This document shows, one piece after another, positions 24,269 to 44,325 of a DNA stretch of 64,000 bases (position 1 is the stretch's first letter; each line of letters begins with the position of its first letter). The stretch spans positions 124,001 through 188,000 of the IMG/VR virus record IMGVR_UViG_3300047560_000921. One strand, written 5' to 3'. The notes under the pieces were generated by a model. The model worked only from the letters and a program-made list of their open reading frames with translations. It made no database searches and was not told the DNA's origin. The position numbers and the translations under genes were made by a program.

Positions 24269-24661
24269 TCAAGACGTAACTTTAGGTGGATGTTGAGTTT
24301 TATTTGAACTCATCATGTTCGAACTAGTAGGATGTTGCTTCCAATGTTCGCTGTGTAATTCACTAGCAATATTAGGCTTGTGTGCAACTAGCCATTTCTT
24401 AATAACAGGAATACAGTCAGCTTTGGGATCCTTCTTTTCTTTGTAAAAATCAAGAAGTTCTTGATGTAAGTCAGGATAAGTCAGGCCTACTCTGCTCAAC
24501 GCTTTGATGCTATCATAAGCATCTTTACCAACAGCAACAGTTCCAAACAGAACCAAATGGCCCAAGCCGATAATATCAATTTTAGCACGTTCGACATCCC
24601 ATAAGTCACCAGAAGGTTTCCATACTCCTTCTTGTTCATTTAAAAATTCATGTGCTCTCAT
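24269..24661 (-). CDS. hypothetical protein with MRxxE[F/L] leader
   Basis: Starts MRAHEFLNE. Confidence 0.7.
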   Translation of the reverse strand: MRAHEFLNEQEGVWKPSGDLWDVERAKIDIIGLGHLVLFGTVAVGKDAYDSIKALSRVGLTYPDLHQELLDFYKEKKDPKADCIPVIKKWLVAHKPNIASELHSEHWKQHPTSSNMMSSNKTQHPPKVTS

Positions 24662-24677
24662 AATATACTCCAGTATA

Positions 24678-25421
24678 CTATTTAATCAATTTTATCATTA
24701 AGCCTGCAAAGTCAAATTCCCACCACTTTTCTTTGGTTGTGTAGCTAATGGGATTGTCGTGGTGATTGGCATGCCATCCCTCCCCAAAGAACAGTATAGC
24801 AGTAATAGGGTTATTGTAAGCATGATGTTTAGGGTTATCCCTGTTTCTGTAGCCAAACCAGTGGTTAATAGTGTTTACACTGCCGCCTATTTCCCATAGC
24901 AATGCCATTGGGGCTAGATATGCACAAATAAACAATGCAGGGCTAATCAGCAACCATGTAATGCCAATGATAATGTGTAGCTTGAAATAGTTTCTATTCA
25001 GCTTAGTTTGGAACTTGTCCTTGAGCATGTCTATAATATGCTCTCCGCCGGCTTGCCCAAACATGCCTAAGAACTGGACTCTAGCTAGGCCCAAGTGCTC
25101 AGGTCCATGTGGGTCACGTTCCGTATCTACAAACTTGTGATGTGCTCTGTGTACTGCGGTCCATACCATGGGACTACCAATGCCCGCATAAGCACCTAGC
25201 AAACTGCCAATCTTCCTGTATCTGTCACTGGCTGGCCAACTGTTGTGTGCTAGCAGTCTGTGGTAAGTCATTACTAGGCCAAAGCATCCGCACAGAACAA
25301 ATACAACCAGTGTAACTAACCACGCAAGGGTAGTGCCGTAGACAATTTGGTATACCAGGCCCATGTGTGCAAGTATTTGTAAGTACAAGACTTTCCAGCT
25401 GGTAGTGAGATATTTTTTCAT
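24678..25421 (-). CDS. membrane fatty acid desaturase (delta-9 acyl-CoA/DesC-like)
   Basis: His boxes HRLLAH, HRAHH, HANHH; TM segments; FGEGWH. Confidence 0.93.
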   Translation of the reverse strand: MKKYLTTSWKVLYLQILAHMGLVYQIVYGTTLAWLVTLVVFVLCGCFGLVMTYHRLLAHNSWPASDRYRKIGSLLGAYAGIGSPMVWTAVHRAHHKFVDTERDPHGPEHLGLARVQFLGMFGQAGGEHIIDMLKDKFQTKLNRNYFKLHIIIGITWLLISPALFICAYLAPMALLWEIGGSVNTINHWFGYRNRDNPKHHAYNNPITAILFFGEGWHANHHDNPISYTTKEKWWEFDFAGLMIKLIK

Positions 25422-26044
25422 AGGAATAAGTTACAAAGGAGAATCTTACGAGTTTGTTGTACTAGTGGTACACAGTGCCAAGTGACTTCAGTGTTAAGCC
25501 AAAAGGTTCCTGTCCACTTTTTATTTCTACCACGATGTATAATCTTTTCAGGATACTCGTGTTCTACTTGCTCAGGCATCCAACGCATAATACGTTCACG
25601 AGCAAATGTAGTTTGCGTTTCGTTGTCCTGCAAATTAATAATACCCGACAGCAAAACAAATCTGTTATCTAAATGCCAGCCTTGATGAAACCCCGGCTTG
25701 TCTATTACACGGCTAAAAGCAACTTTAGTTCTGCTAGCATAACGCTTTGTATACCATACATCAAAGTTAGGACTATCGAACAGTGGATAACGCAATGGAT
25801 CTAGGGCCATTAAACGTTGTGTAATTGTTTTAAGTGGATCATACATTTCCTTAGACAACTTGCTGAACTCGTCATTAACATCGTCTCTGGGAAATATACT
25901 TAAACGCTGTGGCTCAACTTCTAGATTACCATAATCAATTCTGCCAGGTTCGGCAGCAAATAGCAAATCAGTATCAAACCTTTCAAACTCTGGAAACTCA
26001 ACATCCAATATAGCTGGTTCTTTGGAAATTTCGAAGATATTCAT
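25418..26044 (-). CDS. putative 2OG-Fe(II) oxygenase-like protein
   Basis: WHLD (HxD) and distal TWHCV; the ORF track starts at TTG 26080, the first ATG is at 26044. Confidence 0.55.
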   Translation of the reverse strand: MNIFEISKEPAILDVEFPEFERFDTDLLFAAEPGRIDYGNLEVEPQRLSIFPRDDVNDEFSKLSKEMYDPLKTITQRLMALDPLRYPLFDSPNFDVWYTKRYASRTKVAFSRVIDKPGFHQGWHLDNRFVLLSGIINLQDNETQTTFARERIMRWMPEQVEHEYPEKIIHRGRNKKWTGTFWLNTEVTWHCVPLVQQTRKILLCNLFL

Positions 26045-26080
26045 TAGCACAGTATACACTAAGAACAAGTGTACAGTCAA

Positions 26081-26177
26081 TAGTTCCGGTTACTTTATCC
26101 GGAGCACACTACGCGGTGCAGTTCAATTGCGCGGACGCCTATATCCGTAGACGACAACGGCCCTAAGGTGGGTTCTG
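26081..26177 (-). ncRNA. candidate structured intergenic RNA
   Basis: GC-rich gap with stems CCC/GGG, CCGT/ACGG, CGCG/CGCG, GCAC/GTGC and TCCGG/CCGGA. Confidence 0.45.
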
Positions 26178-26477
26178 TTACTTGTCTAGCAAGTCTTTGT
26201 ATACTGTATTTAATCTTGTGGTGATCCAAATGCCAGGACTTCCGTGTACGCTTTTTGTAACGTCTGGCATCTTAGCGTGATAAAAGTCGTATAGTCTATC
26301 TTGGATATCGTCTGTAACTTCGGTGCTATTGTAGTCTAGATTATTGCTGGCTAACCGTTTTAGTATTTCTATCTCTTGCTCAGTAAATTGCTTACTTAAT
26401 TGATGAGCTTCGTTTGCTGGTACAGGTATATGCGGCTTCCGTGGCGGTTTATACCTTTGCTTTTTTAAATTGTTCAT
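26178..26477 (-). CDS. hypothetical protein
   Basis: 99-aa ORF. Confidence 0.6.
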   Translation of the reverse strand: MNNLKKQRYKPPRKPHIPVPANEAHQLSKQFTEQEIEILKRLASNNLDYNSTEVTDDIQDRLYDFYHAKMPDVTKSVHGSPGIWITTRLNTVYKDLLDK

Positions 26478-26490
26478 AACCGTTATAATG

Positions 26491-26513
26491 AAAAAGGCTA
26501 CTGACGTAGCCTT
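26491..26513 (-). terminator. rho-independent terminator after dps
   Basis: AAGGCTAC-gtca-GTAGCC followed by TTTTT on the minus strand. Confidence 0.75.
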
Positions 26514-26523
26514 GTGAAACTGA

Positions 26524-26964
26524 TTAGTTTCTACGTAGAATACTTCTTAACATCCACGCATGTTTTTTGTGTACATCCACACGGTCTTGGATAAAGTTGC
26601 TTAGTCCAAGTTCTTGTGCGCCTTCTGCAAATTCGTACACTCTGTACAATAGTCCTAAGATCTTTTCGTTGTCGTCATGAATCTTAGCTATCATATCTAA
26701 TGCAGTAGGAATTTTTAATTCGTCTTCGATGATTGTTAGTTCTGCAAAACGACTTAAACTGCCAGGTGCAAACGAACCTAACTTACGAATGTTTTCAGCA
26801 ATAGGATCTACTGCTTCCCATAGTTCAGTATACAAGTCTTCAAAGAATTTGTGGAACTGAGGAAAGTGAACTCCTTCTACGTTCCAGTGATAGTTGTGTG
26901 TTTTAAGATATAATGCAAAAGTGCTGGCGTGCAACACTTTCATTTCGTGTACTAGTTGTTCCAT
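26524..26964 (-). CDS. dps: Dps family ferritin-like DNA protection protein
   Basis: LKTHNYHWNVEG, HKFFEDLY, DPIAENIRKLG, KKHAWML. Confidence 0.95.
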   Translation of the reverse strand: MEQLVHEMKVLHASTFALYLKTHNYHWNVEGVHFPQFHKFFEDLYTELWEAVDPIAENIRKLGSFAPGSLSRFAELTIIEDELKIPTALDMIAKIHDDNEKILGLLYRVYEFAEGAQELGLSNFIQDRVDVHKKHAWMLRSILRRN

Positions 26965-26965
26965 A

Positions 26966-27136
26966 TTATACTCCGCCTCCTACTAGCTTACCGTTGAATG
27001 GATGTTTAGTTCCCCATTTAGCAACAGGAATCTTTTTAGCTTTATCGGTGGCTTTAACTTGGTCCGAAAACACCTTGTCTTTAGTGTAATCAGAACCAAG
27101 TTTACTTTTCGATTCTACTAGTTCGTAGAATCTCAT
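26966..27136 (-). CDS. 56-aa peptide with MRFYELVE leader (below the ORF track cutoff)
   Basis: Manual translation MRFYELVESKSKLGSDYTKDKVFSDQVKATDKAKKIPVAKWGTKHPFNGKLVGGGV; ATGA-coupled to the upstream gene and fills the gap exactly. Confidence 0.8.
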   Translation of the reverse strand: MRFYELVESKSKLGSDYTKDKVFSDQVKATDKAKKIPVAKWGTKHPFNGKLVGGGV

Positions 27137-29360: not shown

Positions 29361-29436
29361 ATATGTTAGCTCGCAGAATTCTTACCCAATAAATGGGATT
29401 TTCATGTATTATTTAGCAGAAAATGAAATTAAATGA

Positions 29437-29898
29437 TTAAGCCAATCGACTCTCGGCAACTTGCTTAACTGCTTGAATTGCAGGTTGTACTTGGTTCTTT
29501 TTCAGTGTAACCGGGTAAGATTTGCCATTATGTTCGAATTCATCTTTACCAGACGCCGCGGCCCTGATGTGTGCAAATGCAAAATCTTCTTCGCTGCCGC
29601 CTAGCTTTTTTGCAGCCCAGTCCCATAATTGGTCAGCGCCCGCCATGGCAAACTTACTGGCATTATAAGCACCGGCGGCACCCATTCCGATGCCTAAAAT
29701 TGGACCTAGTATTCCTATTAATGCCGGCGTGCCTGCGGCAGCAATGCCGCCAACAGCTAGTCCAGCCGCGCCGCGTACTAATGCTGGAGCCGCCTCATCG
29801 GTTTTCTTTTTAGATACTCTACGTTGCATAGAGCCCATGGGCGTTGCTACTGCGGCAACGGCACCTGACGTGCATTCAACTAGTTCGTGTAATCTCAT
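29437..29898 (-). CDS. putative internal protein with MRLHELVE leader and Gly/Ala-rich hydrophobic segment
   Basis: Leader motif; late-promoter box immediately upstream. Confidence 0.65.
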   Translation of the reverse strand: MRLHELVECTSGAVAAVATPMGSMQRRVSKKKTDEAAPALVRGAAGLAVGGIAAAGTPALIGILGPILGIGMGAAGAYNASKFAMAGADQLWDWAAKKLGGSEEDFAFAHIRAAASGKDEFEHNGKSYPVTLKKNQVQPAIQAVKQVAESRLA

Positions 29899-29903
29899 AA
29901 TTA

Positions 29904-29911
29904 TATTTATA
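29904..29911 (-). promoter_or_regulatory. T4 late promoter consensus TATAAATA
   Basis: Exact TATAAATA 6 nt upstream of ATG 29898. Confidence 0.7.
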
Positions 29912-29976: not shown

Positions 29977-30828
29977 TCACATGACATAAACATTACCCTC
30001 TGCGTTCCCTAATACATCACTAAACATCATGCCCATATCGTTGGCTAGTCTTGCAGTTGCTTCTTCTCTACTAAGTTCATCTGCATAGTCTTGCTTGATA
30101 CGCATACCGTTAGTTGCATTACCCCATGCTTTACGGCCGTAGCTTAATGCCACTGGCAATGGGTTAAGGGTTACATGTCCAGTCTTGATATACTGGGCAA
30201 ATAATTCGTACAAGAATTCATATGGACGTTTAATTTGTCCTGTTCTACTACTACGTTGGGTGCCAATGGCATTAAACAGTGCGTTGTATTCAGCTGACAT
30301 ATCCCAGTTAACGCTGGAATTATATGAGCTTCTTGTGTTCTTGCCATAGTACTCTTGCAATATTCCATTGACGGTATTAAAGAATAGCTTTTCTGTTTCA
30401 GTCCATGCATTAGTTACATTACCCATGCGGCGATTAGTGGCTTGGATAGCATGTCCAAACCTATGTGCCATGATCCATGGGGTCATCATAACTCTACCAG
30501 TGCCACTGTTACCCACAAACACAATAGTAATTGCCGATTCGTGCCCTTGCATGATTTGATTTACTTGCTCGGGACTAAACATTTGAGCCAATGTATCTTG
30601 TTTAACTAAACCTGTTTCAGCTTTCTTACCAGTTCCAGTAACATTACTGAAAAATAGTCTAAAGTCGTAGGGAGTGTTTTCTAAAAACTGTGCAGTCTTT
30701 AACTTGTTAGTGTCGTGGGTAATAAGTTTTCTATCAACTTCATGACGAAATGGACCACTTTTGTCAAAGTCGCCTAATGTGTCGTAGCTTGCCAATGGCA
30801 TTTCGCTGATTAAATCACGTAATCTCAT
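29977..30828 (-). CDS. hypothetical protein with MRLRDL leader; HRFGH motif
   Basis: TPWIMAHRFGHAI resembles a zincin HExxH helix with Glu replaced by Arg. Confidence 0.6.
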   Translation of the reverse strand: MRLRDLISEMPLASYDTLGDFDKSGPFRHEVDRKLITHDTNKLKTAQFLENTPYDFRLFFSNVTGTGKKAETGLVKQDTLAQMFSPEQVNQIMQGHESAITIVFVGNSGTGRVMMTPWIMAHRFGHAIQATNRRMGNVTNAWTETEKLFFNTVNGILQEYYGKNTRSSYNSSVNWDMSAEYNALFNAIGTQRSSRTGQIKRPYEFLYELFAQYIKTGHVTLNPLPVALSYGRKAWGNATNGMRIKQDYADELSREEATARLANDMGMMFSDVLGNAEGNVYVM

Positions 30829-31364
30829 AGTGTTGGGTTTCCAAATACAGTTTCTCTAACAACCTTACCGCCGGGCAGTCTACGGTCGTATGTATCATTG
30901 TCTACCATTTCTAAAAATGGATCATTGAACAATGCTTGCAGTGTTTTTAAATCTTCTACAGCCGGTATGCTGAGCTTTTTCAATATATGACGCATAGCGT
31001 CACTGGACTCTAACCATACACCTGGCTTAGTTAGCATTTGTTGTATCTTATTAATAGCTTTATCTTTGCTAGTTCTAGATCCATCATGCCCGATGCCTTG
31101 AATTTTAAAACCATGCCATGGTTCGCCTGCTCTATTGCGTCTATAAAATACACAAGCATCTACATCTGGATCATGATCCCAGTCTATTACGTTCCAGTCA
31201 CTGGGTATAACATCTTTAAGACTGTTAACAAAACTTCCTTGCGGAGTATTACTATATGCAACCTGCACTAAGCCCACAAGGTCATCGCTTACTTCATGCT
31301 TGTCTGCATTAGATATGTCAATGACCCATTGGTTCTTAGGAAGGTCTAGTTCAAATAATCTCAT
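30825..31364 (-). CDS. hypothetical protein with MRLFEL leader
   Basis: 179-aa ORF, translationally coupled. Confidence 0.65.
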   Translation of the reverse strand: MRLFELDLPKNQWVIDISNADKHEVSDDLVGLVQVAYSNTPQGSFVNSLKDVIPSDWNVIDWDHDPDVDACVFYRRNRAGEPWHGFKIQGIGHDGSRTSKDKAINKIQQMLTKPGVWLESSDAMRHILKKLSIPAVEDLKTLQALFNDPFLEMVDNDTYDRRLPGGKVVRETVFGNPTL

Positions 31365-32518
31365 TAATGGAATAGTAAGTAACTGCCCACAACATCATTG
31401 CGGTTAGCAGAGTTATCGCCATCACCTGGCATAACAATAACGTTCCACTTTGGCTTATCGCCTACTGGAAGTTTCATCATTTGATCGTATGTTAAAATGC
31501 TGTCTTTATCAATGTGATACTTTTGTGCCAGACGATCCTTAAAGCCTTCTAAGTTATTTGCACTTGCAAATTGCATACGTCCTTTAGAATCCTTTTTCAA
31601 CTCGTTACCATCACGTGCAATCAAGTCAAAGAACATGTCCTTAGGGACAACCTTACTATGCTTGGTACGTACTAAATCAACTTTCTTTTCTTGTCCACGT
31701 TTAGCACCTTGGGAAAAGTTCATGTTAAAGTTCTTTGGACGAGCGGCATTGGCAACATCACCCATCTTAGTGTAAGCATAGAAGCCAACGTCTGGGTTAG
31801 CTTCAGCAACAGCGTAGGCCATGTCCATGTACTCTGGGCTAAAGAAGTCGCCAGCATCATGCCACCGCACAACAATCTTCGCACCTTTTTTAGCATACTT
31901 GACTTTAGCGGCCGCAATTTCTGCGTTTAACTTTTCTGTAAAACCTTCTGGGTCGTTTAACAAGAAGTTAAGCATACGGGCCAAGCCCATGCTAACTGCT
32001 TTGAACATCACATAGCTACCTTTCATAGCATAGCAATAAGTTTGGCAAGCACCAGCGCCCGGGCAAGTGTCTACAACCACGAACTCACCGGTCTTTTCAT
32101 TTACAGCAAGACCCTTTAAGGCTGGCAAGCCAATATCAAAGATTGCTTCAGTACCAGTTTCGCTGTGTTGCATTTTAGCATTTTGTCCAAGAATGCTCTT
32201 TGGACGAACCATAATAGCGGCTTTTAGTTTTTCAGTATCAAATGTTTTACCGGACTCGTCTTTAACTTCAATGTTGCTACCGTGGATATATGGATAATCA
32301 TATTTGTCACGCTTGGTTTTTTGTTTGTTTTTACTGCGGCCCATTAGAGCTTGCATTTCATCGTCGGGTATTGAACGATAGTTTGCGCCTAGGCCAAAGT
32401 CGGCTTCGTCAAGATCTTCGTCGGGGTCAACAAATTGACCTAAGGACATTACAGTAAGACCGTTTAACTTACTTTCCGTTAGTGTTGTTTTAGATTCGAA
32501 TAGTTCGTAAAATCTCAT
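31364..32518 (-). CDS. GP88-like protein (Cys-x5-Cys-x3-Cys) with MRFYELFE leader
   Basis: TCPGAGACQTYCYAMKG, VRWHDAGDF, YAYTK. Confidence 0.65.
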   Translation of the reverse strand: MRFYELFESKTTLTESKLNGLTVMSLGQFVDPDEDLDEADFGLGANYRSIPDDEMQALMGRSKNKQKTKRDKYDYPYIHGSNIEVKDESGKTFDTEKLKAAIMVRPKSILGQNAKMQHSETGTEAIFDIGLPALKGLAVNEKTGEFVVVDTCPGAGACQTYCYAMKGSYVMFKAVSMGLARMLNFLLNDPEGFTEKLNAEIAAAKVKYAKKGAKIVVRWHDAGDFFSPEYMDMAYAVAEANPDVGFYAYTKMGDVANAARPKNFNMNFSQGAKRGQEKKVDLVRTKHSKVVPKDMFFDLIARDGNELKKDSKGRMQFASANNLEGFKDRLAQKYHIDKDSILTYDQMMKLPVGDKPKWNVIVMPGDGDNSANRNDVVGSYLLFH

Positions 32519-32527: not shown

Positions 32528-33772
32528 TTACTTTACAGTTTCAACAGCATCAGCAAATGCTTGTGGTATAAGTTTTTGTAGCAATGCGCTAAGTTCGCCT
32601 TCAATGGTCATAGCACATTCAAACTCTGCTTCTTCGTCTTCAATATCTTCTAGCACTTCTTGAATGTAGAACCATATTTCACGGCCGCGAACAAAGTCAG
32701 TAATAGGTCCACTTATCTCGTCGTACAAGGCATCGTCGTCGTTAACTAGTTCAGGAGCCTCTTGAATCAGTTGTACGATTGATCTAGTAAGATCATTGAT
32801 GCCACGCTTACTCATCATGTCTTCTGCTAGTTCATAAATTTCTTCCATGCCGTTAAAGAACTTTACAGCCCTGCCCATTTCTTTAAAGATTTCTTTAGCT
32901 AGCGTTGTTCTATTTTGTTCAAGTAAGTGTCTTAGGGATTCACCAAACACTGGCATAGCTCTAATCATCAATGCTGGTAAGTCGGTGATTTCTGGATCTA
33001 ATGCAAGGATGTGATTTTCTTTTGCTTGTCGAGCAAAGATAGTTGCTAGTTGTGGGTAGCGGTTTCTTAGTTCAGTTAAGTTAACACGATGGTCCTTTTC
33101 ATTCATGAACTGTTTTGTTTGGAAGTGGAACTGATACTTCTCACCGGCATATGAAGGCTTCTTAGGAAGGATAATATACATTTCGCCTTCTTTGTTATAG
33201 CGATTGAACATGTTATTCTCTTTACCCGCTGTACACCACTTAGTACCCTGTCCATAATAACAAGCGGCTGTTTGGTCTTCGGGAATAAGAACACGAATAT
33301 CTGCATCTTGATAGTAAGGCTTAGCCTGCCCACGGTCAACATCTTTTGGCTCATCTACTACATCTGGATGTTGGTCAACAACTTGTACTAGTCCTGCTAG
33401 GTCTTTGATACGGCCAATGTCGTTGTTTGGTGCTGGAATTTGTTTTTTGTTTACTAACTTGAAGAACTTTTGTAGGGGCTCTGTTACTTTAGTGATAGCG
33501 TCTTCAAACTTTAAGGATGGGTTGTTAACGTAGTTGCGAATAATCCATGGCACATATTGTTTGTTCTTTGTTGGATCAGCTAGTTCAATGCGTCCTAGTA
33601 AATGATCTAAGACTACTTGGTCTTCTGCGCCAGCATTAACAATGCGTTGTTGCCACTGTGGCGGCTCTTTTTGGAACTTTGCTAGCAGGCCGGCACCCAG
33701 TTTTTGCGCTGTAACGTCGCGGCTGTACTCTAGTAAAGTTGATGTATTAGTAAAAAGTTCAAATAATCTCAT
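32528..33772 (-). CDS. PcfJ-like/GTKWC-domain protein with MRLFELF leader
   Basis: AACYYGQGTKWCTAG...YIILP...KYQFHF. Confidence 0.55.
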   Translation of the reverse strand: MRLFELFTNTSTLLEYSRDVTAQKLGAGLLAKFQKEPPQWQQRIVNAGAEDQVVLDHLLGRIELADPTKNKQYVPWIIRNYVNNPSLKFEDAITKVTEPLQKFFKLVNKKQIPAPNNDIGRIKDLAGLVQVVDQHPDVVDEPKDVDRGQAKPYYQDADIRVLIPEDQTAACYYGQGTKWCTAGKENNMFNRYNKEGEMYIILPKKPSYAGEKYQFHFQTKQFMNEKDHRVNLTELRNRYPQLATIFARQAKENHILALDPEITDLPALMIRAMPVFGESLRHLLEQNRTTLAKEIFKEMGRAVKFFNGMEEIYELAEDMMSKRGINDLTRSIVQLIQEAPELVNDDDALYDEISGPITDFVRGREIWFYIQEVLEDIEDEEAEFECAMTIEGELSALLQKLIPQAFADAVETVK

Positions 33773-33792: not shown

Positions 33793-33800
33793 TATTTATT
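33793..33800 (-). promoter_or_regulatory. T4-like late promoter box
   Basis: AATAAATA upstream of ATG 33772. Confidence 0.5.
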
Positions 33801-33822: not shown

Positions 33823-34926
33823 TTACAGAATGTTGGGGTTTACACCCACTTGAACTAGCCTGTTGCGTATGGTTTCTTCCATGCTGGCAGCGATTTCATC
33901 ATCTTCGCGCCACATGTCGTCGAAGTTTAAGTCAGCATTTTCTAGAATTCCTAACTTGGCAAATGTCTTAGTGATTCTAGGAGTTAACAAGCCAATGTCC
34001 TTGATGATAGGAACAATGCGGCTCATCATGTGCTTTTTGACTTTGTGGTAAGCAACGTTTTCTTTAATCTGACGGCCAACATCTTTCATGTCCAAGTGAT
34101 GGTCCAGGATTTCGTTAAAGTCTAAACGTGCATACAGCCACATAACACAAGCAATCAAATAGTCCTCGCGGTCCATTAGTTCTTGCGGGGTTAGGCTCTT
34201 ATAAAAGTCTTTAAGAATGTAACGTCCAAATGCAATATGTCTGGCTTCGTCCTGCATGATATAAGCTAACATACTTTTAGCCAATGGGTTAGAAGCATTG
34301 TCACGCATTAGTTGCATACTACCGATACCCCACCCTTCTGCTACAACGTGACTATTAAGGAACACTAAGTCCCACTTGTCGCTTTTAAACGCAATTTCAT
34401 ACATCTTCATCAAGCTACGCTGTACAGGACGTACCATGTCAATGCGGTGTGCAAACTTACCAAACGCTTCGATGTGACGACTTTCGTCAATGGCCTGTGT
34501 AGTAGCTAGCCACTTAGCATCATGATCTGGTGCGCTTTCGATAATCTTAGCCGCACTAATCATAGCACCTTGCTCACCGTGAATAAAGGCCCCAATCAAG
34601 TAAGCATTATAATCGTAGACAATATCGTCTCTAGTCTTTTGACTTAGCTTGCCCCATAGCTCAGTGCCATATAAAGGAACAATAGTTTCGTCAATACCCA
34701 TTGGATTGCGTGGGTCTGTTTCAATGGACCAATCAATTCTAGTTTGTGCGTCCCACTGCTCTCGCTTACTTTTTTCGTACAGTGCTAGCAGTTCTTTTCT
34801 ATGGTCGTTGTATTCCCAGCTGAAGTTGGTGGGACAGCCATTGGCAATTTCCCAGTTCATTTGATAGCCAGCAGGTAGCTGGCTTTGTGTTGTGTGTGGA
34901 CCCAATGGGTGCTGTCTGTTTGTCAT
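33823..34926 (-). CDS. ferritin-like diiron oxygenase (AurF-like family)
   Basis: HGEQG...DESRH...EGWG...DEARH paired ExxH diiron ligands; YEKSKREQWDAQTRIDW. Confidence 0.8.
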   Translation of the reverse strand: MTNRQHPLGPHTTQSQLPAGYQMNWEIANGCPTNFSWEYNDHRKELLALYEKSKREQWDAQTRIDWSIETDPRNPMGIDETIVPLYGTELWGKLSQKTRDDIVYDYNAYLIGAFIHGEQGAMISAAKIIESAPDHDAKWLATTQAIDESRHIEAFGKFAHRIDMVRPVQRSLMKMYEIAFKSDKWDLVFLNSHVVAEGWGIGSMQLMRDNASNPLAKSMLAYIMQDEARHIAFGRYILKDFYKSLTPQELMDREDYLIACVMWLYARLDFNEILDHHLDMKDVGRQIKENVAYHKVKKHMMSRIVPIIKDIGLLTPRITKTFAKLGILENADLNFDDMWREDDEIAASMEETIRNRLVQVGVNPNIL

Positions 34927-35904: not shown

Positions 35905-37935
35905 TTACCATTGGCCTTTGGTGGTATACCTGTACACAAAACTAAAGTCCATATTCTTACGTTGCTCGAGTAACTCTAAATGTCGATCCCGTTCCTTGTC
36001 ATCGTAGATAACTTGTCCTGTACTACCAGGCACTGCTAAACGCCTAGCCCTGCTAGCCGCGACGCTGGTTGCAGTGGAAAAATCGTTGAAACTCCAAGCA
36101 TTGTCTGCTTGCGTAAACTTATAAGAAAAGTCAGCGGTCCACTGCCCTTGTTCGTCGATATCAAACTGTATGTTGGAAATAAAATTACTGCTCAAGTTCC
36201 AACCGAACTCCATGGAATCTTGTTGTGGATCAAACATTAAGTTTAACTTAAACGCACCCCTAGTTCTCCACAGTATACGCAATAATGGCCATACTTCATT
36301 GACTACCGAGTCGGCAAACGCACCTTGCCCTGTGCTACAGATATTAAAGTCAAACTGCTCAAATTCTATTTCTTTTACACTGTCATTGGCAAACGATAGT
36401 GTGTAAGACTTTTTAATGTTAGGGCGGCTAGTGTAATCGTGTTGATCCTTGTTTACTAAGTGTATAAGCAATATGTTAAAAATCTTTAAACGTATTAGCC
36501 TATGTACTTTACTGTTAGCATAATCGTTGGTGATCCAGTTGTTTTCAAAATAGTTTTTGGCAACATCAAATTTGCCCACTGCCTGCGCTATAATAGTGTC
36601 GGGCGGAATAATAAATCCCATGCCTGGTGCAATACTACTAATCTTGTTGTTTCTGTTACGCCATGCTAGTTGCATACTGTCATACAAGTCTTGTGGGCGT
36701 TCGGTAGGAAAACCAATAATCCAGTTAGTAAATGCTTCTACGCCTACGCTGGCACCGTCACGTAAGTTTTGCTCTATTTCGTCTACAGTAACACCCTTGT
36801 CCATGTCCCGCAGTACTTTATTGGAACCCGACTCGATACCATAGTTTAAACTAAAACATCCGGAGTCCGCTAAGTCCTTGTAATAGTCCAAGTCCATTCG
36901 GCCATCGCAACGAGCATATCCTGTCCAGTGTAGCTTCATACCACGTGCTACTACACCTTTGGCAAATGCTCTAAGCTCTTTAAGGTTGCCGTTAACTAGA
37001 CTGTCAATGAACCATATAACATCTGTGCCACGATTGTAGTATAAGTCTACTAGCTCTTCTATAATGTTCCTAGCCATTCTGCCGCGATATTTCCAGTAAT
37101 GTGTTTCGCTACAGAACACACATTTGGCTGTACACCCCCTGCTAATTTCAGCATTAACGCCATTGGGCATTGTATAATCAGTAACTGGGAAATGGCTATA
37201 ATCTGGGCTAGGCAAGCTGTCTAAGTCTAGTCGCTGGCCGTCAGTTTGTTTAAACCATACTGGACGAGGTTTGGCCACACCTGCTTCGATTTCTCCTAAG
37301 GCTTCCAATAACATTTTCTCGCCTTCACCGGATACAATGTAATCGTATTCCTTGGGTGGTTCCCAGTAGCTTTGGTGGCAACTAGGTCCACCAACCATTA
37401 TAATGACATCGGGCAGTCTGCGTTTAAGTTCTTGTGCCATCCACAAGCTGGCTTGTTCATTGCAGTAGTAAAGTGTAAGCCCTACTACAGTTGGATTAAT
37501 TGCAACAATTTTATCTACATATTGTTGCAGGAATGGTTCTACATGCGGTTTTAGTTCTTGCTCATAGTGTGGTGTGCGCCACTTCCAATCTCTATTACCG
37601 GCCCATGGATTATAATCAAGTCCCCATGAGCTATGGTCTTGGTAGGCTTTGGCATTCAAATCAAATGCATGAGTTTCAAAACCTGCGGCTTTGGTAATTG
37701 CAGCCAAACGTGCAACATTATATGGGGGAAAGTTGTGTGCCCATTCTGGTAACAGTAAAAATACTATACTAGTTTTTCTACTAATATAATTAATGTCTAC
37801 TGGAGTTAAGTTACTTTGTGGGACTGCCCTAGCATAGGGCATGATAGCTTCTAGTGCAAGCCTATGCTTTTCGTCATAGTCTTCTTCTACTCGTTTAACG
37901 GGATTTAGGTTTCGAATCTCAAAGAGTTTTTTCAT
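35905..37935 (-). CDS. cobalamin-binding (class B-like) radical SAM protein
   Basis: B12-binding segment VVGLTLYY...IMVGGPS; SRGCTAKCVFC; GIESGS; IIGFPTE. Confidence 0.9.
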   Translation of the reverse strand: MKKLFEIRNLNPVKRVEEDYDEKHRLALEAIMPYARAVPQSNLTPVDINYISRKTSIVFLLLPEWAHNFPPYNVARLAAITKAAGFETHAFDLNAKAYQDHSSWGLDYNPWAGNRDWKWRTPHYEQELKPHVEPFLQQYVDKIVAINPTVVGLTLYYCNEQASLWMAQELKRRLPDVIIMVGGPSCHQSYWEPPKEYDYIVSGEGEKMLLEALGEIEAGVAKPRPVWFKQTDGQRLDLDSLPSPDYSHFPVTDYTMPNGVNAEISRGCTAKCVFCSETHYWKYRGRMARNIIEELVDLYYNRGTDVIWFIDSLVNGNLKELRAFAKGVVARGMKLHWTGYARCDGRMDLDYYKDLADSGCFSLNYGIESGSNKVLRDMDKGVTVDEIEQNLRDGASVGVEAFTNWIIGFPTERPQDLYDSMQLAWRNRNNKISSIAPGMGFIIPPDTIIAQAVGKFDVAKNYFENNWITNDYANSKVHRLIRLKIFNILLIHLVNKDQHDYTSRPNIKKSYTLSFANDSVKEIEFEQFDFNICSTGQGAFADSVVNEVWPLLRILWRTRGAFKLNLMFDPQQDSMEFGWNLSSNFISNIQFDIDEQGQWTADFSYKFTQADNAWSFNDFSTATSVAASRARRLAVPGSTGQVIYDDKERDRHLELLEQRKNMDFSFVYRYTTKGQW

Positions 37936-37960: not shown

Positions 37961-38935
37961 TCACTTGCGAATTGTACGAACCTTACTAACTTTCTTAACC
38001 GGATCTTTATGAACAACTTTCTTTACCTTGTGCGTAATTGGATCACGTTGGTAAACAAAGTAATGCTCGCCATGTTTAACAGGAACACCCAGTGTTACGT
38101 CTCTGCCCATATACTTGGCTTCGTCTAAGCCCTCTTCTTTTTCTACGAAATGATTACCGTCACCGTCTAGTTGAATAATCTCGTCAATGAAGTCTTTTGC
38201 ATTAGTAATAAACTCATCATAGTCAGTGACATTAGTCATGTCTGTCTTGGTATACACCATACCGTCTAAGGAATATTCTACATCAGTAAATTCGCCAGGG
38301 AATATGAATACTGAACCTTTACGGACACGCCCTTTGTCATGGAATACAAAGTGAGCTTGCCTTGCACCGCTGTCCCCGTCATCTTCGTCCCCGTCATCAC
38401 CTGGGGCAAATTCATTTAATGAACTTTCTGCACCTTCATCGAACACACGGCCACCAAAACCTCTAGCAGGTTCACGAGTGTCAGGCACACCTGCTCTGCT
38501 TGGTCGTTTACCTGGATTAGCATCCTTCCACTTCTGGACTCGTTGTTTTTGTGCAGGAGTAAGTTCGTCAGGTGATACACGGGTACCATCGTCCCACTCC
38601 CATTTACCACGCTTGTTATTGAAGCTAAGACCTTCCGCCACACCTTTTTTGGCAAAGCCGCTATTGTGGAAACTACCTTCAATAAACCATTCGCAGTCGT
38701 CATCGTTTACTTTGACATTAAGCACGTGAACACTGTAGCCTTGATCTTCTAACCATGATTGCGCTTCTTGGATCATGTGTTGTTTAGACACAGCACCGCT
38801 GACATCTAAATCGTTCCACCAGCCATCGCCTACTAAGTCAGTCATTTGGTCGTCAGTGTACCAACGTCCTGATTCACCGTTACCCGGTGCAAATTCGTTT
38901 AAGTTTCGTTTTTGTGAAAATTCTCTATAGCGCAT
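37961..38935 (-). CDS. putative internal head protein, acidic, with repeated LNEFAPG
   Basis: MRYREFS leader; LNEFAPG twice, GVAEG, GLDEAKY. Confidence 0.65.
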   Translation of the reverse strand: MRYREFSQKRNLNEFAPGNGESGRWYTDDQMTDLVGDGWWNDLDVSGAVSKQHMIQEAQSWLEDQGYSVHVLNVKVNDDDCEWFIEGSFHNSGFAKKGVAEGLSFNNKRGKWEWDDGTRVSPDELTPAQKQRVQKWKDANPGKRPSRAGVPDTREPARGFGGRVFDEGAESSLNEFAPGDDGDEDDGDSGARQAHFVFHDKGRVRKGSVFIFPGEFTDVEYSLDGMVYTKTDMTNVTDYDEFITNAKDFIDEIIQLDGDGNHFVEKEEGLDEAKYMGRDVTLGVPVKHGEHYFVYQRDPITHKVKKVVHKDPVKKVSKVRTIRK

Positions 38936-38942
38936 ATGAAAA

Positions 38943-38971
38943 AACCCTTGATATTTTATTTATCAAGGGTT
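38943..38971. terminator. 11-bp perfect inverted repeat containing an ATAAATA box
   Basis: AACCCTTGATA-N7-TATCAAGGGTT, followed by a T-run on the minus strand; ATAAATA at 38957-38963. Confidence 0.6.
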
Positions 38972-38991
38972 AAGGGGTGAGCAGTTAGCTA

Positions 38992-39210
38992 TTACTTGCT
39001 GAATACTGCACGGGCGCTTTGCATAGCAAGGTCTTGCCAAGGCTTGTAAAAAGCATTTACTTTGTCTTGGTCATAGTGCTTGGTGAATTCGCCAGCTACA
39101 CGCTTGGCAACTGTAGATTGAGCTTCTACGATAGTTTTTGTGAATTCGAAAGCAGCCTTGTTAACGTCTGTAACGAAAGCGGTTGTTGTTTCTTTGAATA
39201 AGTCTTGCAT
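38992..39210 (-). CDS. small amphipathic helical protein (phasin-like)
   Basis: 72 aa, all-helical amphipathic pattern; TAGGAGA RBS; resemblance only. Confidence 0.45.
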   Translation of the reverse strand: MQDLFKETTTAFVTDVNKAAFEFTKTIVEAQSTVAKRVAGEFTKHYDQDKVNAFYKPWQDLAMQSARAVFSK

Positions 39211-39389
39211 AATATTTCTCCTAAAAAGCGAGGTTAATTTGGAACCCTATCATTAGGCGTTCCGTGTACTAGCAGTACATTCTGTAGTATAACATTATTT
39301 ATGTTGCAGTGCAACAAGATTTCACATCTTTTTCTAGTGAGTTGATACTAATCCAATTTTTTAGGTAAATATTGGAATAGGAGAATAAC

Positions 39390-41403: not shown

Positions 41404-41767
41404 TTTTTGTAACAACTTTCCAAGAGCCCCAACAATGTTTGACGCCCTCACTCTTAACAATCCAATCAATAGTAACAATAGCCAACTTTACGTTATCGCA
41501 ATTGAACTCAATGGTAAGTGGCACGTTGACTTTTACAGGCCGACTAAACTTCAAATCCATTTTTGCACTTAATGCATACTTGATGTCTTTAAAGTATTCT
41601 TGTTCTGTAAATTTGCTCCACACTAACCATTGGGGTAGTTTGCTGATAATAAAGCCGCCTTGCACTACACCGTGAACTACGTGAATTTCCTGGTCGTCAC
41701 CGCTGATACGTGCAAAGTCCTGCACTTGCTCTAGCGTAAAACAGTCCGTGGCAATAAATGTAGTCAT
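41390..41767 (-). CDS. MaoC-like hot-dog fold dehydratase/hydratase
   Basis: FARISGDDQEIH (D-x4-H hydratase motif), LKFSRPV. Confidence 0.75.
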   Translation of the reverse strand: MTTFIATDCFTLEQVQDFARISGDDQEIHVVHGVVQGGFIISKLPQWLVWSKFTEQEYFKDIKYALSAKMDLKFSRPVKVNVPLTIEFNCDNVKLAIVTIDWIVKSEGVKHCWGSWKVVTKNDTK

Positions 41768-41772
41768 GCTGT

Positions 41773-41801
41773 ATTATACACTATTTTTGAATATTAGTCA
41801 A
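41773..41801 (-). promoter_or_regulatory. sigma70-type promoter
   Basis: TTGACT-N17-TATAAT immediately upstream of ATG 41767. Confidence 0.75.
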
Positions 41802-42072
41802 TAATGGTAATAGCTGTAACATTCATAATTTTGAAACTACGCCATTCCAATTTATCAGTACACCAAACGCTGAACACATTTGGATTTTTGGCTTTCGTTC
41901 CCTTGCTTTCCACAATGGGAAAACTACCTTCTTTTAGAGTACAAGGCATTACTCGTTGTGTACCGTCTACTTTGGTAAAAGTAACTTCGCAGTGGTTAAC
42001 TCTTAGCAAGTCGCCAATGGTTTCGGTACGTTGTTCTAGTGTGTCTGCTTCTGTAAATTCAATGGTAATCAT
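41794..42072 (-). CDS. T4-like WYL_2/DUF2693-type SH3-fold protein
   Basis: EVTFTKVDGTQRVMPCTL...VWCTDKLEWRSF. Confidence 0.75.
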   Translation of the reverse strand: MITIEFTEADTLEQRTETIGDLLRVNHCEVTFTKVDGTQRVMPCTLKEGSFPIVESKGTKAKNPNVFSVWCTDKLEWRSFKIMNVTAITIID

Positions 42073-42434
42073 TTGGTATGGTCCTTGGCTAGTTCGTAAA
42101 TCAAATCAAGTTCTCGTTTAGCTTGATCGACGTTGTCTAAGGCAGCTTGAACACTGGCGTGCTTTTGTGCCATTTCTTTCATTGCAGATTCCTTGGCCAT
42201 TTGTTCCATGACCCAGTTAATTGCAGTTTGTACAATGGGACTGAGTTCAATGCTACTGTATCCGCCGCCGATTGTCATCCACGACACTCCGTCATAGACT
42301 TCTGCTTGTTGGGTGTTGGTGTTAAAGCGCAACATGCCAGCACTTTGACTTCCAGGGCTGATATAAGGTTTGTTGCCTTGATATGTTTGTACGTTTATGT
42401 ACGGAGAATTTGAAGTGATATTGTTGATAAACAT
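42069..42434 (-). CDS. hypothetical phage protein
   Basis: GMLRFN..EVYDG..W motif; promoter upstream. Confidence 0.7.
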   Translation of the reverse strand: MFINNITSNSPYINVQTYQGNKPYISPGSQSAGMLRFNTNTQQAEVYDGVSWMTIGGGYSSIELSPIVQTAINWVMEQMAKESAMKEMAQKHASVQAALDNVDQAKRELDLIYELAKDHTK

Positions 42435-42439
42435 GCCAT

Positions 42440-42468
42440 AGTATAGCTAAGTTTAACTTAAATGTCAA
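42440..42468 (-). promoter_or_regulatory. sigma70-type promoter
   Basis: TTGACA-N17-TATACT. Confidence 0.75.
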
Positions 42469-42752
42469 ACGCTAGTACTGGCTTCAATGGTAAAATCAAA
42501 GGGTAATTTTGCCAATAGCTTTTTGGATATTACATCGCCGTCAATTTTACTTAGGTCACTGCTCAGTGGTATATCATAGCAATGTTCCATGTCACGTTCG
42601 TGATAAACCATTACAGCACCGTCTGCTTGCTGACTAATTAACTTGCCCACAGGACTGTCAAATACAATTTTGAAAAATGACTTTAGTGTGTCTTTGTCTA
42701 GTTCTTGATCCGATACTAGTCTAATAAAATGGTTAAATTCTTCTGCTATCAT
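42465..42752 (-). CDS. hypothetical protein
   Basis: 95-aa ORF, coupled to the upstream gene. Confidence 0.65.
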   Translation of the reverse strand: MIAEEFNHFIRLVSDQELDKDTLKSFFKIVFDSPVGKLISQQADGAVMVYHERDMEHCYDIPLSSDLSKIDGDVISKKLLAKLPFDFTIEASTSV

Positions 42753-43387
42753 TGTGAGTCCTTAGTATCGTAAGCCGCAGGGTTTATTAAATAGAAGCCC
42801 GCTTGTCCGCCTGTTAATCTTGTATGGAAGTCCCAGGTAGGAAGTAATCTCTTTACCATTCTTGCGTATAGCTTTGTACGTGAAGGTTCTGCAGAAGTAA
42901 ACTGTATCTCTTCTACTTTATCTCCATAGCTCGTTAAAAACGTGCGAGTAATATCGACCACAGTGGACATAACCTCTGCAGAGTTTCCTGTGCCTGCTAG
43001 GCCAAATTCTTTGTCGTAATCGAACTCGCTATCTCGTTGCTTAAATCCAATGGTCCATTGCTTAGGTCTGGATGTTCTCATTACCCTAGCATACCAAAGG
43101 TATTCTATGTCGCCAATCTTAAAACTAGCAAACGCTTCTTCACTGCCACGGAATTCCCAGTTCCAAGTCTTGCCAGATTTGAATAGCTCAGTTAGTGATT
43201 CGCTTTCAGTTACTTGAATAAGTCTGCTACTGCCAATTGGCTTAACTGGGAATATGTCGGCTATTTGTTGCTCCATGGTATGGATGCCCACATCAACACT
43301 AAGAGCACGTTCCCAGCGAGGATCTTGCGCTTCTTTTTCATTTTTAGGAATGTATCCACTACACTCTAGAAGTTCTTGTAATCTCAT
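42749..43387 (-). CDS. hypothetical protein with MRLQELLE leader
   Basis: ATG 43387 overlaps the upstream stop (ATGA). Confidence 0.7.
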   Translation of the reverse strand: MRLQELLECSGYIPKNEKEAQDPRWERALSVDVGIHTMEQQIADIFPVKPIGSSRLIQVTESESLTELFKSGKTWNWEFRGSEEAFASFKIGDIEYLWYARVMRTSRPKQWTIGFKQRDSEFDYDKEFGLAGTGNSAEVMSTVVDITRTFLTSYGDKVEEIQFTSAEPSRTKLYARMVKRLLPTWDFHTRLTGGQAGFYLINPAAYDTKDSQ

Positions 43388-44325
43388 TGGCCTCTCCACA
43401 CTGCATAAAGTCCAGTATCGGAATTATAGTTGCCATATACTTTGCTTAGGTTTGTATCAACATAGGCCTGTAGTTCTTTTTTAGTAGTGTTAGGTTGTAC
43501 ATCAAACGCAAAATATTGGTAGCCTTCGCGACCTTTGCCGAGATATTGACCACCTAGCTTGCCCATAATTGTATCTATTCTATTTTCAGCAGCTTTGTTT
43601 TTGCTAGCAATATACCTTTTATCACTTGCTCCTCTTGCATCAGCGGGATCATCAGTCTCTAAGTCCCAGTTATCAACCTTGAAAAACCCTTTCATTTCAA
43701 CTCCTGGGATTTGACTTAGACTCATCCAGTTACGACGACCACCTGGTGTTTGACTAGCTCCAGCAAGTAATGGACGTTTCATAATAGTTAAGACAATGCC
43801 ATATAAGGCTTTAGCTAGACCAACACCGCGATATTGTTCATCTACTGTAATAGTTCCAACTTGTAAGGCGCCACTAAGTGGAAACCTAAGTGGAAACCCG
43901 GGCCCTACGTTATGTAAACTTAATTTACCCACTAGTCTACCTGGCGCCTTGTCAAACTCTTCTTTGCGCCTTTCGTTTCGTTGTTTCCAGTATTCTACTC
44001 TGCTAGCATGTTCGCGACTATTATACCATGAAAGTTTCTTTGGTTCGGGTGTAAACTCGTACTCGCCTTTGTTTATTTTGTCCCATAGCTTAACTTCAAT
44101 GTCTCCGCTATCATTTGTTATAGAATAAAGTAACCCACTACCACCAGGTAATGGCTTAATTGTTTTAGTAGAACCGTATTCTACGTCTAAGTATTCCTTG
44201 CCGCCTTCGAACCCGCTCTTGCCTAAGCGTTCGATTTCAGTTAAGTTGGCACTTTCTACATTGTATCTAGGATCAGTTTTCTGACGATCCTCAGTTTGTT
44301 TTTTAAATAGTTCTCTTAATCTCAT
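43384..44325 (-). CDS. GNAT-fold protein with MRLRELF leader
   Basis: ITVDEQYRGVGLAKALY acetyl-CoA motif A; QTPGGRRNW. Confidence 0.7.
   Translation of the reverse strand: MRLRELFKKQTEDRQKTDPRYNVESANLTEIERLGKSGFEGGKEYLDVEYGSTKTIKPLPGGSGLLYSITNDSGDIEVKLWDKINKGEYEFTPEPKKLSWYNSREHASRVEYWKQRNERRKEEFDKAPGRLVGKLSLHNVGPGFPLRFPLSGALQVGTITVDEQYRGVGLAKALYGIVLTIMKRPLLAGASQTPGGRRNWMSLSQIPGVEMKGFFKVDNWDLETDDPADARGASDKRYIASKNKAAENRIDTIMGKLGGQYLGKGREGYQYFAFDVQPNTTKKELQAYVDTNLSKVYGNYNSDTGLYAVWRGQ

What the first reader, a model, noticed from the sequence alone, without database searches (positions are those of the whole stretch)
24269..44325. Eleven unrelated proteins share an N-terminal leader resembling the T4 capsid-targeting sequence
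Seen at start codons: 24661 MRAHEFLNE, 27136 MRFYELVE, 29898 MRLHELVE, 30828 MRLRDLISE, 31364 MRLFELD, 32518 MRFYELFE, 33772 MRLFELF, 37935 MKKLFEI (looser), 38935 MRYREFS, 43387 MRLQELLE, 44325 MRLRELF. Eight begin with the nucleotides ATGAGATT. Replication and metabolic genes lack the motif, and several of these genes follow ATAAATA boxes. Established: T4 internal proteins use an about 10-aa N-terminal signal (MKTYQEFIAE) for head packaging, which the gp21 protease removes after Glu. Inference: a portable address tag that loads a diverse cargo of enzymes into the capsid for injection with the DNA.
Basis: partly seen in the sequence, partly recalled or inferred. Interest (0 to 1): 0.82.

Follow-up and report, generated by a model that had tools for sequence, protein, structure and literature searches.

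The report
T4-like capsid-targeting leader on phage cargo
Ten unrelated proteins of an uncultured freshwater jumbo phage carry the same short N-terminal tag, which looks and behaves like the phage T4 signal that loads proteins into the capsid and is then cut off, and related phages put this tag on about 150 protein families including ordinary enzymes.

Summary
Ten of 76 genes in the window, all on the minus strand between 24.3 and 44.3 kb, start with M-R-[LFYA]-x-[ED]-[LF]; their bodies are unrelated, and eight start with ATGAGATT. The eleventh gene (37935, a B12/radical SAM enzyme) does not belong.

All ten leaders end in [L/I]-x-E, the T4 gp21 cleavage motif. In two unrelated cargo families, over 95% of listed metagenomic homologues keep a leader that varies in length but always ends [L/I]-x-E at the start of the conserved body. 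In 79 related loci, 23% of genes carry the tag, against 1% at internal Met, 2% in head-module loci and 0 of 328 core head proteins. It sits on about 152 families (SOD, NT5C, deaminase, GH19, nucleotidyltransferases, RNases, GNAT).

The clade has a T4 gp21-family protease (PF03420), adjacent to leader clusters in three loci. The PA5oct orthologue of one cargo is a mass-spectrometry-detected virion protein with the same leader.

Best reading: a T4-type capsid-targeting propeptide, greatly expanded. Packaging, cleavage and injection remain inferred for this phage, and its own protease gene was not located.

The parts
24269..24661 (-). Leader gene, 130 aa, MRAHEFLNE|Q; predicted mature protein 121 aa; no family match
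26966..27136 (-). Leader gene, 56 aa, MRFYELVE|S; predicted mature 48-aa basic protein (pI 10), similar in size and charge to T4 internal proteins; its start overlaps the upstream stop (ATGA)
29437..29898 (-). Leader gene, 153 aa, MRLHELVE|C; Gly/Ala-rich hydrophobic body; a full TATAAATA box lies 13 nt upstream
29904..29911 (-). TATAAATA box of T4 late-promoter type, upstream of 29898
29977..30828 (-). Leader gene, 283 aa, MRLRDLISE|MPL; orthologues in 5 related loci start MRATEF[VI]TE|APL
30825..31364 (-). Leader gene, 179 aa, MRLFELD; the only L-x-E is LFE at residues 3-5, so the processing site is uncertain
31364..32518 (-). Leader gene, 384 aa, MRFYELFE|S; body belongs to Pfam GP88 (PF17338, E=1.6e-33); leader-bearing orthologues in 15 related loci
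32528..33772 (-). Leader gene, 414 aa, MRLFELFTNTSTLLE|YSRD; orthologue of the PA5oct virion protein gp205; AF2 model pLDDT 90.7 with residues 1-13 disordered; Glu15 and Tyr16 invariant in the family
33793..33799 (-). ATAAATA box heading the tightly packed operon 33772 > 32518 > 31364 > 30828
37961..38935 (-). Leader gene, 324 aa, MRYREFSQKRNLNE|F; an ATAAATA box lies 28 nt upstream (38957-38963)
42749..43387 (-). Leader gene, 212 aa, MRLQELLE|C; body is DUF6934 (PF22028)
43384..44325 (-). Leader gene, 313 aa, with a 30-residue leader ending ...ANLTE|IERLGKSGF; GNAT-like family with 980 homologues, of which 115 of the 120 listed carry the leader
46074..46080 (-). ATAAATA box at the head of the gene string 46056 > 45886 > 44325 > 43387
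35905..37935 (-). Not part of the system: B12-binding radical SAM enzyme, MKKLFEI; fails the motif and has a TATAAT-type upstream box

Best explanation
The shared N-terminus is a capsid-targeting propeptide of the T4 type. A short, probably amphipathic leader (clade consensus M-R-A-x-E-F-[I/L]-x-E; in this genome mostly M-R-L/F-x-E-L-x-E) would dock each cargo protein onto the scaffolding core while the prohead assembles. The gp21-family prohead protease would then cut after the Glu of [L/I]-x-E, freeing the mature protein inside the head, from where it can leave with the DNA at infection. What is shown: the tag exists, it is portable, it is an add-on outside the folded body, it ends in the gp21-type site, it is confined to a gene cluster with late-type promoter boxes, and it occurs in a clade that has the gp21-type protease. 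Supported only through relatives: presence in virions (PA5oct gp205, gp150, gp230). Inferred: docking to the core, cleavage, and ejection into the host.
For: Enrichment and unrelated bodies in the window. The real T4 leaders share the EF[IL]xE core and the long ipI layout; in T4, residues 4 and 7 drive targeting and residues 8 and 10 drive processing (PMC9026906). Two unrelated families keep a variable-length leader ending [L/I]-x-E exactly at the start of the conserved body: about 110 of the 120 listed in one and 115 of 120 in the other; the junction Glu is invariant. AF2 leaves residues 1-13 disordered and the body ordered. Census: 371 of 1,644 genes in 79 related loci plus the window, against 1.05% at internal Met; [LIFVM]xE ends at residue 8-9 in 257 of 371; about 152 families; enzyme cargo. 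The tagged SOD aligns to cellular SODs from its residue 14-15 to their residue 2-4. Negative controls: 18 of 919 genes and 0 of 328 portal, protease, scaffold or MCP proteins in loci chosen by MCP; the CcrBL9 homologue has no leader. The protease is PF03420, hits T4 gp21 structure 5JBL, and keeps the His and Ser motifs; it lies a few kb from leader genes in L188, L201 and L204. PA5oct gp205 (MKLFEVF), gp150 (MKINDIITE, next to the portal) and gp230 (MRLDEIQ) carry ESI-MS/MS flags. ATAAATA boxes head the operons. Leaders show genome-specific dialects.
Against: There is no direct evidence for this phage, which is known only from a freshwater metagenome. Its own protease and head genes were not found in the 93 kb of the 231-kb contig that I read. 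The PA5oct mass-spectrometry list also contains RNR, thymidylate synthase and similar proteins, so detection is not fully specific, and three leader-like PA5oct ORFs were not detected. Atu_ph07, the closest cultured relative with a virion proteome (DNA polymerase 47% identical), shows no leader genes in the 50 kb examined. Housekeeping-type cargo such as SOD, pterin dehydratase and dCMP deaminase is not an obvious thing to inject. The spacing from Met to the EF core is one residue shorter than in T4. The Arg2 codon AGA is strongly favoured (71% against 28%), so some selection at the nucleotide level also acts at these starts.
Confidence: 0.72

Rival explanations
1. The shared start is a nucleotide-level feature: a translation-initiation context or ATGA stop-start coupling, with no function for the peptide.
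For: Eight starts are identical (ATGAGATT). AGA is used for Arg2 in 71% of leaders against 28% of Arg codons elsewhere. Three starts overlap the upstream stop.
Against: Across relatives the conservation is at the amino-acid level, with conservative swaps (R/K, E/D/Q, F/L/I) and variable length, yet a Glu fixed at the junction up to 30 residues from the start. Highly expressed late genes (MCP, scaffold, portal, protease) never have it (0 of 328). Five of the eight ATGAGATT starts have no overlapping upstream gene.
Confidence: 0.04
2. The leader is a recognition sequence for the neighbouring radical SAM, AurF and desaturase enzymes, which would modify these proteins post-translationally (RiPP-like logic).
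For: Eight radical SAM genes, an AurF-like oxygenase, a desaturase and a ferritin lie next to or between the leader genes.
Against: Homologues of the radical SAM genes occur in only 1-2 of 79 related leader loci, and CxxxCxxC proteins in 4 of 79. PA5oct has tagged virion proteins without such a cluster. The cargo proteins are large folded enzymes, not short precursor peptides.
Confidence: 0.02
3. The leader is a removable N-terminal tag with an intracellular role other than packaging, for example a degron or adaptor tag for the phage-encoded Clp/DnaJ machinery, or a pro-sequence that keeps enzymes inactive until cut.
For: The window encodes a ClpB/ClpA-like ATPase and DnaJ 7-10 kb from the cluster, and relatives encode ClpX, ClpP and ClpS. 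Some cargo consists of housekeeping-type enzymes.
Against: The invariant [L/I]-x-E junction matches gp21 specificity rather than known Clp degrons. Tagged PA5oct proteins are found in virions. Leader clusters lie a few kb from the head module in three loci. The leader is absent from a homologue in a phage that is not T4-like.
Confidence: 0.1
4. The proteins are targeted to the prohead but act only there, as assembly or core components that are degraded or retained, and are not delivered to the host.
For: T4 core proteins are also cleaved by gp21 (PMC5694885). Small leader-like proteins sit beside the portal gene in the position of T4 gp67.
Against: Most cargo consists of complete enzymes with host-directed or nucleotide-directed activities (GH19, RNases, NT5C, deaminase, nucleotidyltransferases). 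The repertoire differs greatly between genomes (152 families), which is typical of accessory effectors rather than assembly parts.
Confidence: 0.1

Closest known systems
Phage T4 capsid-targeting sequence (CTS) of internal proteins IPI, IPII, IPIII and Alt
   Same: An N-terminal propeptide of 8-30 residues on otherwise unrelated proteins. It has a basic residue at position 2 and a core of acidic residue, aromatic/hydrophobic residue, [I/L], x, Glu, and it ends at the gp21 site [L/I]-x-E. The genes are late and non-essential-looking, sit in variable clusters, and occur in a clade with a gp21-family protease.
   Different: The consensus is MRAxEF[IL]xE rather than MKTYQEFIAE, one residue shorter before the EF core. 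The host clade is a distant, uncultured freshwater jumbo-phage group related to PA5oct. There are ten tagged genes in one 20-kb stretch and about 150 tagged families across relatives, many of them canonical enzymes, whereas T4 has three small internal proteins plus Alt. There is no experimental proof here.
Propeptides of phiKZ, 201phi2-1 and SPN3US head and ejection proteins
   Same: Jumbo phages with a gp21-related protease that cuts after Glu; the propeptides are thought to target proteins into the head (PMC5694885).
   Different: Those propeptides are mostly longer than 100 residues, use A/S-x-E, and do not form one short shared tag. Here the tag is 8-15 residues long, of T4 type, and shared by many families.
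Pseudomonas phage PA5oct virion proteins gp205, gp150 and gp230
   Same: gp205 is an orthologue of the window's 414-aa protein, aligned from residue 1, and carries the same leader (MKLFEVF). All three were detected by ESI-MS/MS. The genome is syntenic with the window around GroES, PhoH, DnaJ, ClpA and DNA polymerase.
   Different: PA5oct has only 3-6 leader-like genes, and I found no mention of the leader in the literature I searched. Its gp21-type protease is annotated as 'scaffolding'.

Membership tests
T4-type capsid-targeting sequence (CTS) system | A short (about 10-20 residue) leader at the extreme N-terminus, shared by proteins with unrelated mature parts | tested here: met
   Ten window proteins with unrelated bodies; about 152 families in relatives; the leader lies outside the fold
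T4-type capsid-targeting sequence (CTS) system | The leader ends at the prohead-protease site [L/I]-x-E, with Glu at P1 | tested here: met
   Ten of ten in the window; 257 of 371 end at residue 8-9; the junction Glu is invariant in 53 of 53; 115 of 120 in a second family. This is sequence-level evidence only; cleavage itself was not observed.
T4-type capsid-targeting sequence (CTS) system | Sequence resemblance to the T4 leaders, including the targeting determinants (T4 residues 4 and 7) | tested here: inconclusive
   The core EF[IL]xE and the ipI-like long form are shared. The Phe equivalent to T4 F7 is conserved (211 of 371). The position equivalent to Y4 is mostly Ala, and the spacing from Met is one residue shorter.
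T4-type capsid-targeting sequence (CTS) system | The genome encodes a gp21-family (PF03420) prohead protease | tested here: inconclusive
   Met for the clade: 73 of 80 MCP loci; L188, L201 and L204 beside leader genes; PA5oct gp152; hit to PDB 5JBL; His and Ser motifs kept. Not located in the 93 kb read from this phage's 231-kb contig.
T4-type capsid-targeting sequence (CTS) system | Tagged proteins are physically present in the virion | tested here: inconclusive
   Only through relatives: PA5oct gp205 (orthologue), gp150 and gp230 carry ESI-MS/MS flags. That list also includes some non-structural enzymes.
T4-type capsid-targeting sequence (CTS) system | The leader is sufficient to package a foreign protein and is removed during maturation | not testable with these tools
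   Needs fusion and N-terminomics experiments
T4-type capsid-targeting sequence (CTS) system | Late expression together with the head genes | tested here: inconclusive
   ATAAATA/TATAAATA boxes head the leader operons and are depleted elsewhere, but the same box precedes genes without the leader, and no RNA data exist
phiKZ/SPN3US-type long head propeptides | Propeptides mostly longer than 100 residues with A/S-x-E sites | tested here: not met
   Leaders are 8-30 residues long with L/I at P3 (PMC5694885)
RiPP-type leader peptide recognised by radical SAM enzymes | Co-occurrence with the modifying enzyme genes, and short precursor peptides | tested here: not met
   Radical SAM homologues in 1-2 of 79 leader loci; the cargo proteins are folded enzymes of 48-1,000 aa

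The most novel reading that the evidence does not exclude
The tag marks a large, previously unrecognised set of capsid-loaded and probably injected proteins in a very abundant clade of freshwater jumbo phages. The clade has more than 600 MCP-bearing contigs in IMG/VR and at least 8,000 protease clusters. Any enzyme (SOD, nucleotidases, deaminases, lysozymes, RNases, nucleotidyltransferases) can be recruited simply by grafting about 9 residues onto it. The leader would then serve as a sequence-only predictor of injected effectors and candidate anti-defence proteins in uncultured phages, with genome-specific dialects that co-evolve with the core receptor.
Probability: 0.5. Interest if true: 0.75.

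Novelty: new member of a known kind. Interest (0 to 1): 0.6.

Why it matters
If the tag works as in T4, a nine-residue motif would be enough to read the packaged and injected proteome directly from the sequence of thousands of uncultured phage genomes. That proteome is the first thing the host meets and is a rich source of anti-defence functions, and it is otherwise invisible without virion proteomics. It would also show that the T4 targeting and processing logic (core-docking leader plus gp21 cut after [L/I]-x-E) is ancient and has been scaled up from a few small internal proteins to dozens of ordinary enzymes per genome. Finally, it would provide short, natural tags for loading foreign proteins into jumbo-phage capsids. 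The concept itself has been known since the 1990s; what is new is the clade, the scale and the enzyme cargo.

Tried and rejected
1. A megablast of the region against cultured phages found no match.
2. An exact-pattern scan of IMG/VR with ATGAGATTANNNGAACT gave single chance hits in the loci listed, about a dozen of them on T4-like contigs that carry tail-sheath and portal genes. It was uninformative.
3. Single-linkage clustering of the cargo merged 249 proteins through multi-domain chaining, so I replaced it with clustering that requires reciprocal coverage.
4. Foldseek of the 414-aa cargo against the PDB found no significant match. BFVD returned only uncharacterised phage and giant-virus proteins plus PA5oct gp205, so its activity remains unknown.
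5. I had planned to use the Atu_ph07 virion proteome (Table S5 is available), but 50 kb around its DNA polymerase and MCP showed no leader genes, so I dropped it.
6. The GNAT-like cargo has no homologue in cultured phages.
7. Three routes to this genome's own head module or protease all failed: walking the contig found only replication, metabolic and tail-fibre-like genes; an MCP-alignment scan did not return the contig among more than 600 hits; and a protease homology search was swamped by at least 8,000 hits.
8. No usable RNA runs exist for the region, so I did not use read laying.
9. The RiPP/radical SAM hypothesis is rejected on co-occurrence.
10. I examined gene 37935 as an eleventh member and excluded it.


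Full report
**Observation**

The window is part of a 231-kb IMG/VR contig from a freshwater metagenome. Its family B DNA polymerase is 47-51% identical to those of the jumbo phages Phosso and Atu_ph07. Its gene order around GroES, PhoH, DnaJ, ClpA/B and DNA polymerase parallels Pseudomonas phage PA5oct.

Nearly all genes are on the minus strand. Ten of 76 called genes match M-R-[LFYA]-x-[ED]-[LF]. The same pentapeptide occurs at 13 of 19,333 internal positions, so the binomial p is about 1e-20, although the motif was defined after the fact. ATGAGATT occurs 11 times on the minus strand, never on the plus strand, against 2.3 expected. After removal of the leader, the bodies show no significant pairwise similarity.

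None of the other 66 genes has the motif. In the 92.7 kb of the contig that I could read, all ten lie within a single 20-kb stretch. The eleventh candidate (37935, MKKLFEI) is a B12-binding radical SAM enzyme behind a TATAAT-like box, and I exclude it.

**The leader behaves as a detachable propeptide**

The real T4 leaders, read from NC_000866, are MKTYQEFIAE (ipII, ipIII) and MKTFKEFTSTTTPVSTITE (ipI). All ten window leaders end in [L/I]-x-E, which is the kind of site that the T4 gp21 protease cuts, C-terminal to Glu (PMC5694885; PMC9026906).

The 414-aa protein (32528-33772) has 366 metagenomic homologues. Nearly all of the 120 listed begin M-[RK]-x-x-[EQ]-[FIL]-[IL]-x-E, followed at once by a conserved Y-[SN]-R-D body. 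The leader varies in length from 7 to 15 residues. In a 53-sequence alignment Met1, Glu15 and Tyr16 are invariant. An AlphaFold model (mean pLDDT 90.7) leaves residues 1-13 below pLDDT 50 and orders everything after the junction.

An unrelated GNAT-like protein (43384-44325) has 980 homologues. Of the 120 listed, 115 carry the leader. It again varies in length and always ends [L/I]-x-E directly before the conserved IERLS body.

**Portability and specificity**

Scanning IMG/VR with the 414-aa family alignment gave 79 related loci. In these loci plus the window, 371 of 1,644 called genes begin M-[RK]-x-x-[EDQ]-[FLIVY], against 93 of 8,831 internal Met positions, with up to 12 per 20-kb locus. 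The consensus is M-R-A-x-E-F-[I/L]-x-E, and [LIFVM]-x-E ends at residue 8 or 9 in 257 of 371. With reciprocal-coverage clustering the tag sits on about 152 families, 60 of them seen in at least two loci. A variant without the basic residue (M-[FL]-x-x-E-L-F-E) adds about 30 more genes.

Pfam assigns representatives to these families:
- GH19
- NT5C
- nucleotidyltransferases
- Fe/Mn superoxide dismutase
- cytidine/dCMP deaminase
- pterin dehydratase
- amidoligase
- HicA-like and RegB-like RNases
- GNAT
- GP88, DUF6934 and DUF6321

The tagged SOD aligns to solved cellular SODs from its residue 14-15 to their residue 2-4. It is therefore a complete enzyme plus a 13-residue addition. NT5C looks the same.

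Negative controls:
- In 80 loci selected by MCP alone, only 18 of 919 genes match, and none of 328 portal, gp151-like, protease, scaffold or MCP proteins does.
- The homologue of the 414-aa cargo in the phiCbK-like siphovirus CcrBL9 starts MKSPKAVEV, with no tag.

Leaders of unrelated proteins in one genome are more alike than leaders between genomes (0 of 300 permutations reach the observed difference). Examples are MRVNEV in L202 and MRLxEL in this window. This suggests co-evolution with a genome-specific receptor, or homogenisation by recombination.

**The processing enzyme and the virion link**

PA5oct gp152, annotated as scaffolding, is 38% identical to T4 gp21 (E=1e-22). Three leader loci (L188, L201, L204) carry portal, gp21-like protease, scaffold and MCP genes; in L201 and L188 the first leader genes lie 2.6 and about 4 kb beyond the MCP. 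The clade protease hits only the T4 gp21 structure 5JBL in the PDB (E=6e-15). It keeps the GEL[D/N]HP and GVSSRG motifs and has its own N-terminal L-x-E, like T4's LIE-9. All 120 listed homologues carry PF03420. MCP N-termini in the clade also contain L-x-E sites.

PA5oct gp205 is the orthologue of the window's 414-aa protein, aligned from residue 1. It starts MKLFEVF and is flagged ESI-MS/MS as a structural protein. Two other tagged PA5oct proteins are also flagged: gp150 (MKINDIITE, immediately after the portal gene) and gp230 (MRLDEIQ).

**Expression signals**

ATAAATA occurs only ten times in the window, and every copy lies 12-92 nt upstream of a start on the same strand. It heads the leader operons (33772, 29898 as a full TATAAATA, 38935, and 46056 leading to 44325 and 43387). 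It also precedes genes without the leader. It therefore marks a promoter class, plausibly late, but not the tag itself.

**Rival explanations**

- *Nucleotide-level start signal.* The identical ATGAGATT and the AGA bias at codon 2 (71% against 28%) point this way. The amino-acid-level pattern, the variable length, the fixed junction Glu, and the absence from highly expressed late genes argue against it.
- *RiPP-like leader for the adjacent radical SAM cluster.* Rejected, because such genes occur in only 1-2 of 79 leader loci.
- *Clp-related degron or zymogen pro-sequence.* Not excluded, but it does not explain the gp21-type junction or the virion detection.
- *Packaged but not ejected.* Whether the cargo is injected or only packaged remains open.

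**Limits**

- There is no experiment on this phage.
- Its own protease and head genes were not found in the 40% of the contig I could read.
- The PA5oct mass-spectrometry list is not perfectly specific.
- Atu_ph07 shows no tag in the 50 kb examined.
- The gene calling for the censuses is crude (first ATG, at least 45 aa), so the counts are approximate.

**Comparison and verdict**

The system matches the T4 capsid-targeting sequence in position, length, core sequence, cleavage motif and associated protease family. It differs in consensus, host clade, and above all in the scale and nature of the cargo. The idea that the CTS lets T4-like phages load assorted proteins is already in the literature (PMC9026906). 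Full-text searches found no paper describing this leader in PA5oct-like, huge or metagenomic phages.

I classify it as a new member of a known kind. My confidence in the capsid-targeting mechanism is about 0.7.

Noticed in passing
window 15063-24222 (-), 35905-37935 (-), 33823-34926 (-): Seven radical SAM genes in tandem, plus a B12-binding radical SAM gene and an AurF-like N-oxygenase. This is an unusual enzyme battery for a phage and might be a DNA or metabolite hypermodification pathway. Homologues occur in only 1-2 of 79 related loci.
   Followed up: partly
window 26524-26964 (-) and 24678-25421 (-): Ferritin/Dps-like and fatty-acid-desaturase-like genes sit inside the leader cluster. They recur in the leader clusters of relatives (20 and 12 of 79 loci) but never carry the leader.
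   Followed up: partly
window, both strands: The heptamer ATAAATA is strongly depleted: 10 copies, where base composition suggests roughly 25. It occurs only 12-92 nt upstream of gene starts, so it behaves as a dedicated promoter element.
   Followed up: partly
window 29437-29898 (-), residues 9-22; related family C32: A second short motif, [ST]SGA[IV]AxVAxPMG, follows the leader in two otherwise different proteins. Its meaning is unknown.
   Followed up: no
window 46148-50256 (+): A plus-strand cassette of four genes (methyltransferase and others) with lower GC (36-39%) interrupts the minus-strand gene array. It is probably a recent insertion.
   Followed up: no
L121 34079-34711 (PA5oct gp152, EST35_0152): This gene is annotated 'prohead assembly (scaffolding) protein' but is a clear homologue of the T4 gp21 prohead protease (38% identity, E=1e-22; His and Ser motifs conserved).
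   Followed up: yes
L121 32921-33142 (PA5oct gp150); L219 6564-6797; L201 2401-2664: A small protein (73-87 aa) encoded right after the portal gene, in the position of T4 gp67, begins with a leader-like sequence (MKINDIITE, MFVTELFD, MFIVEMFP).
   Followed up: partly
related loci L129-L207: A leader variant without the basic second residue (M-[FL]-x-x-E-L-F-E) occurs on about 30 further genes, so the simple motif undercounts the tagged genes.
   Followed up: partly
L126 2255-7321 (contig about 190-195 kb, just beyond the window end): A 1,688-aa protein with a tail-fibre-like N-terminus lies next to an NlpC/P60 protein. Structural genes therefore begin immediately beyond the window.
   Followed up: no
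window 43384-44325 versus P0126, P0134, P0149: Some homologues of the GNAT-like cargo carry an extra 80-110-residue domain inserted between the leader and the body, which shows modular growth behind a constant tag.
   Followed up: no
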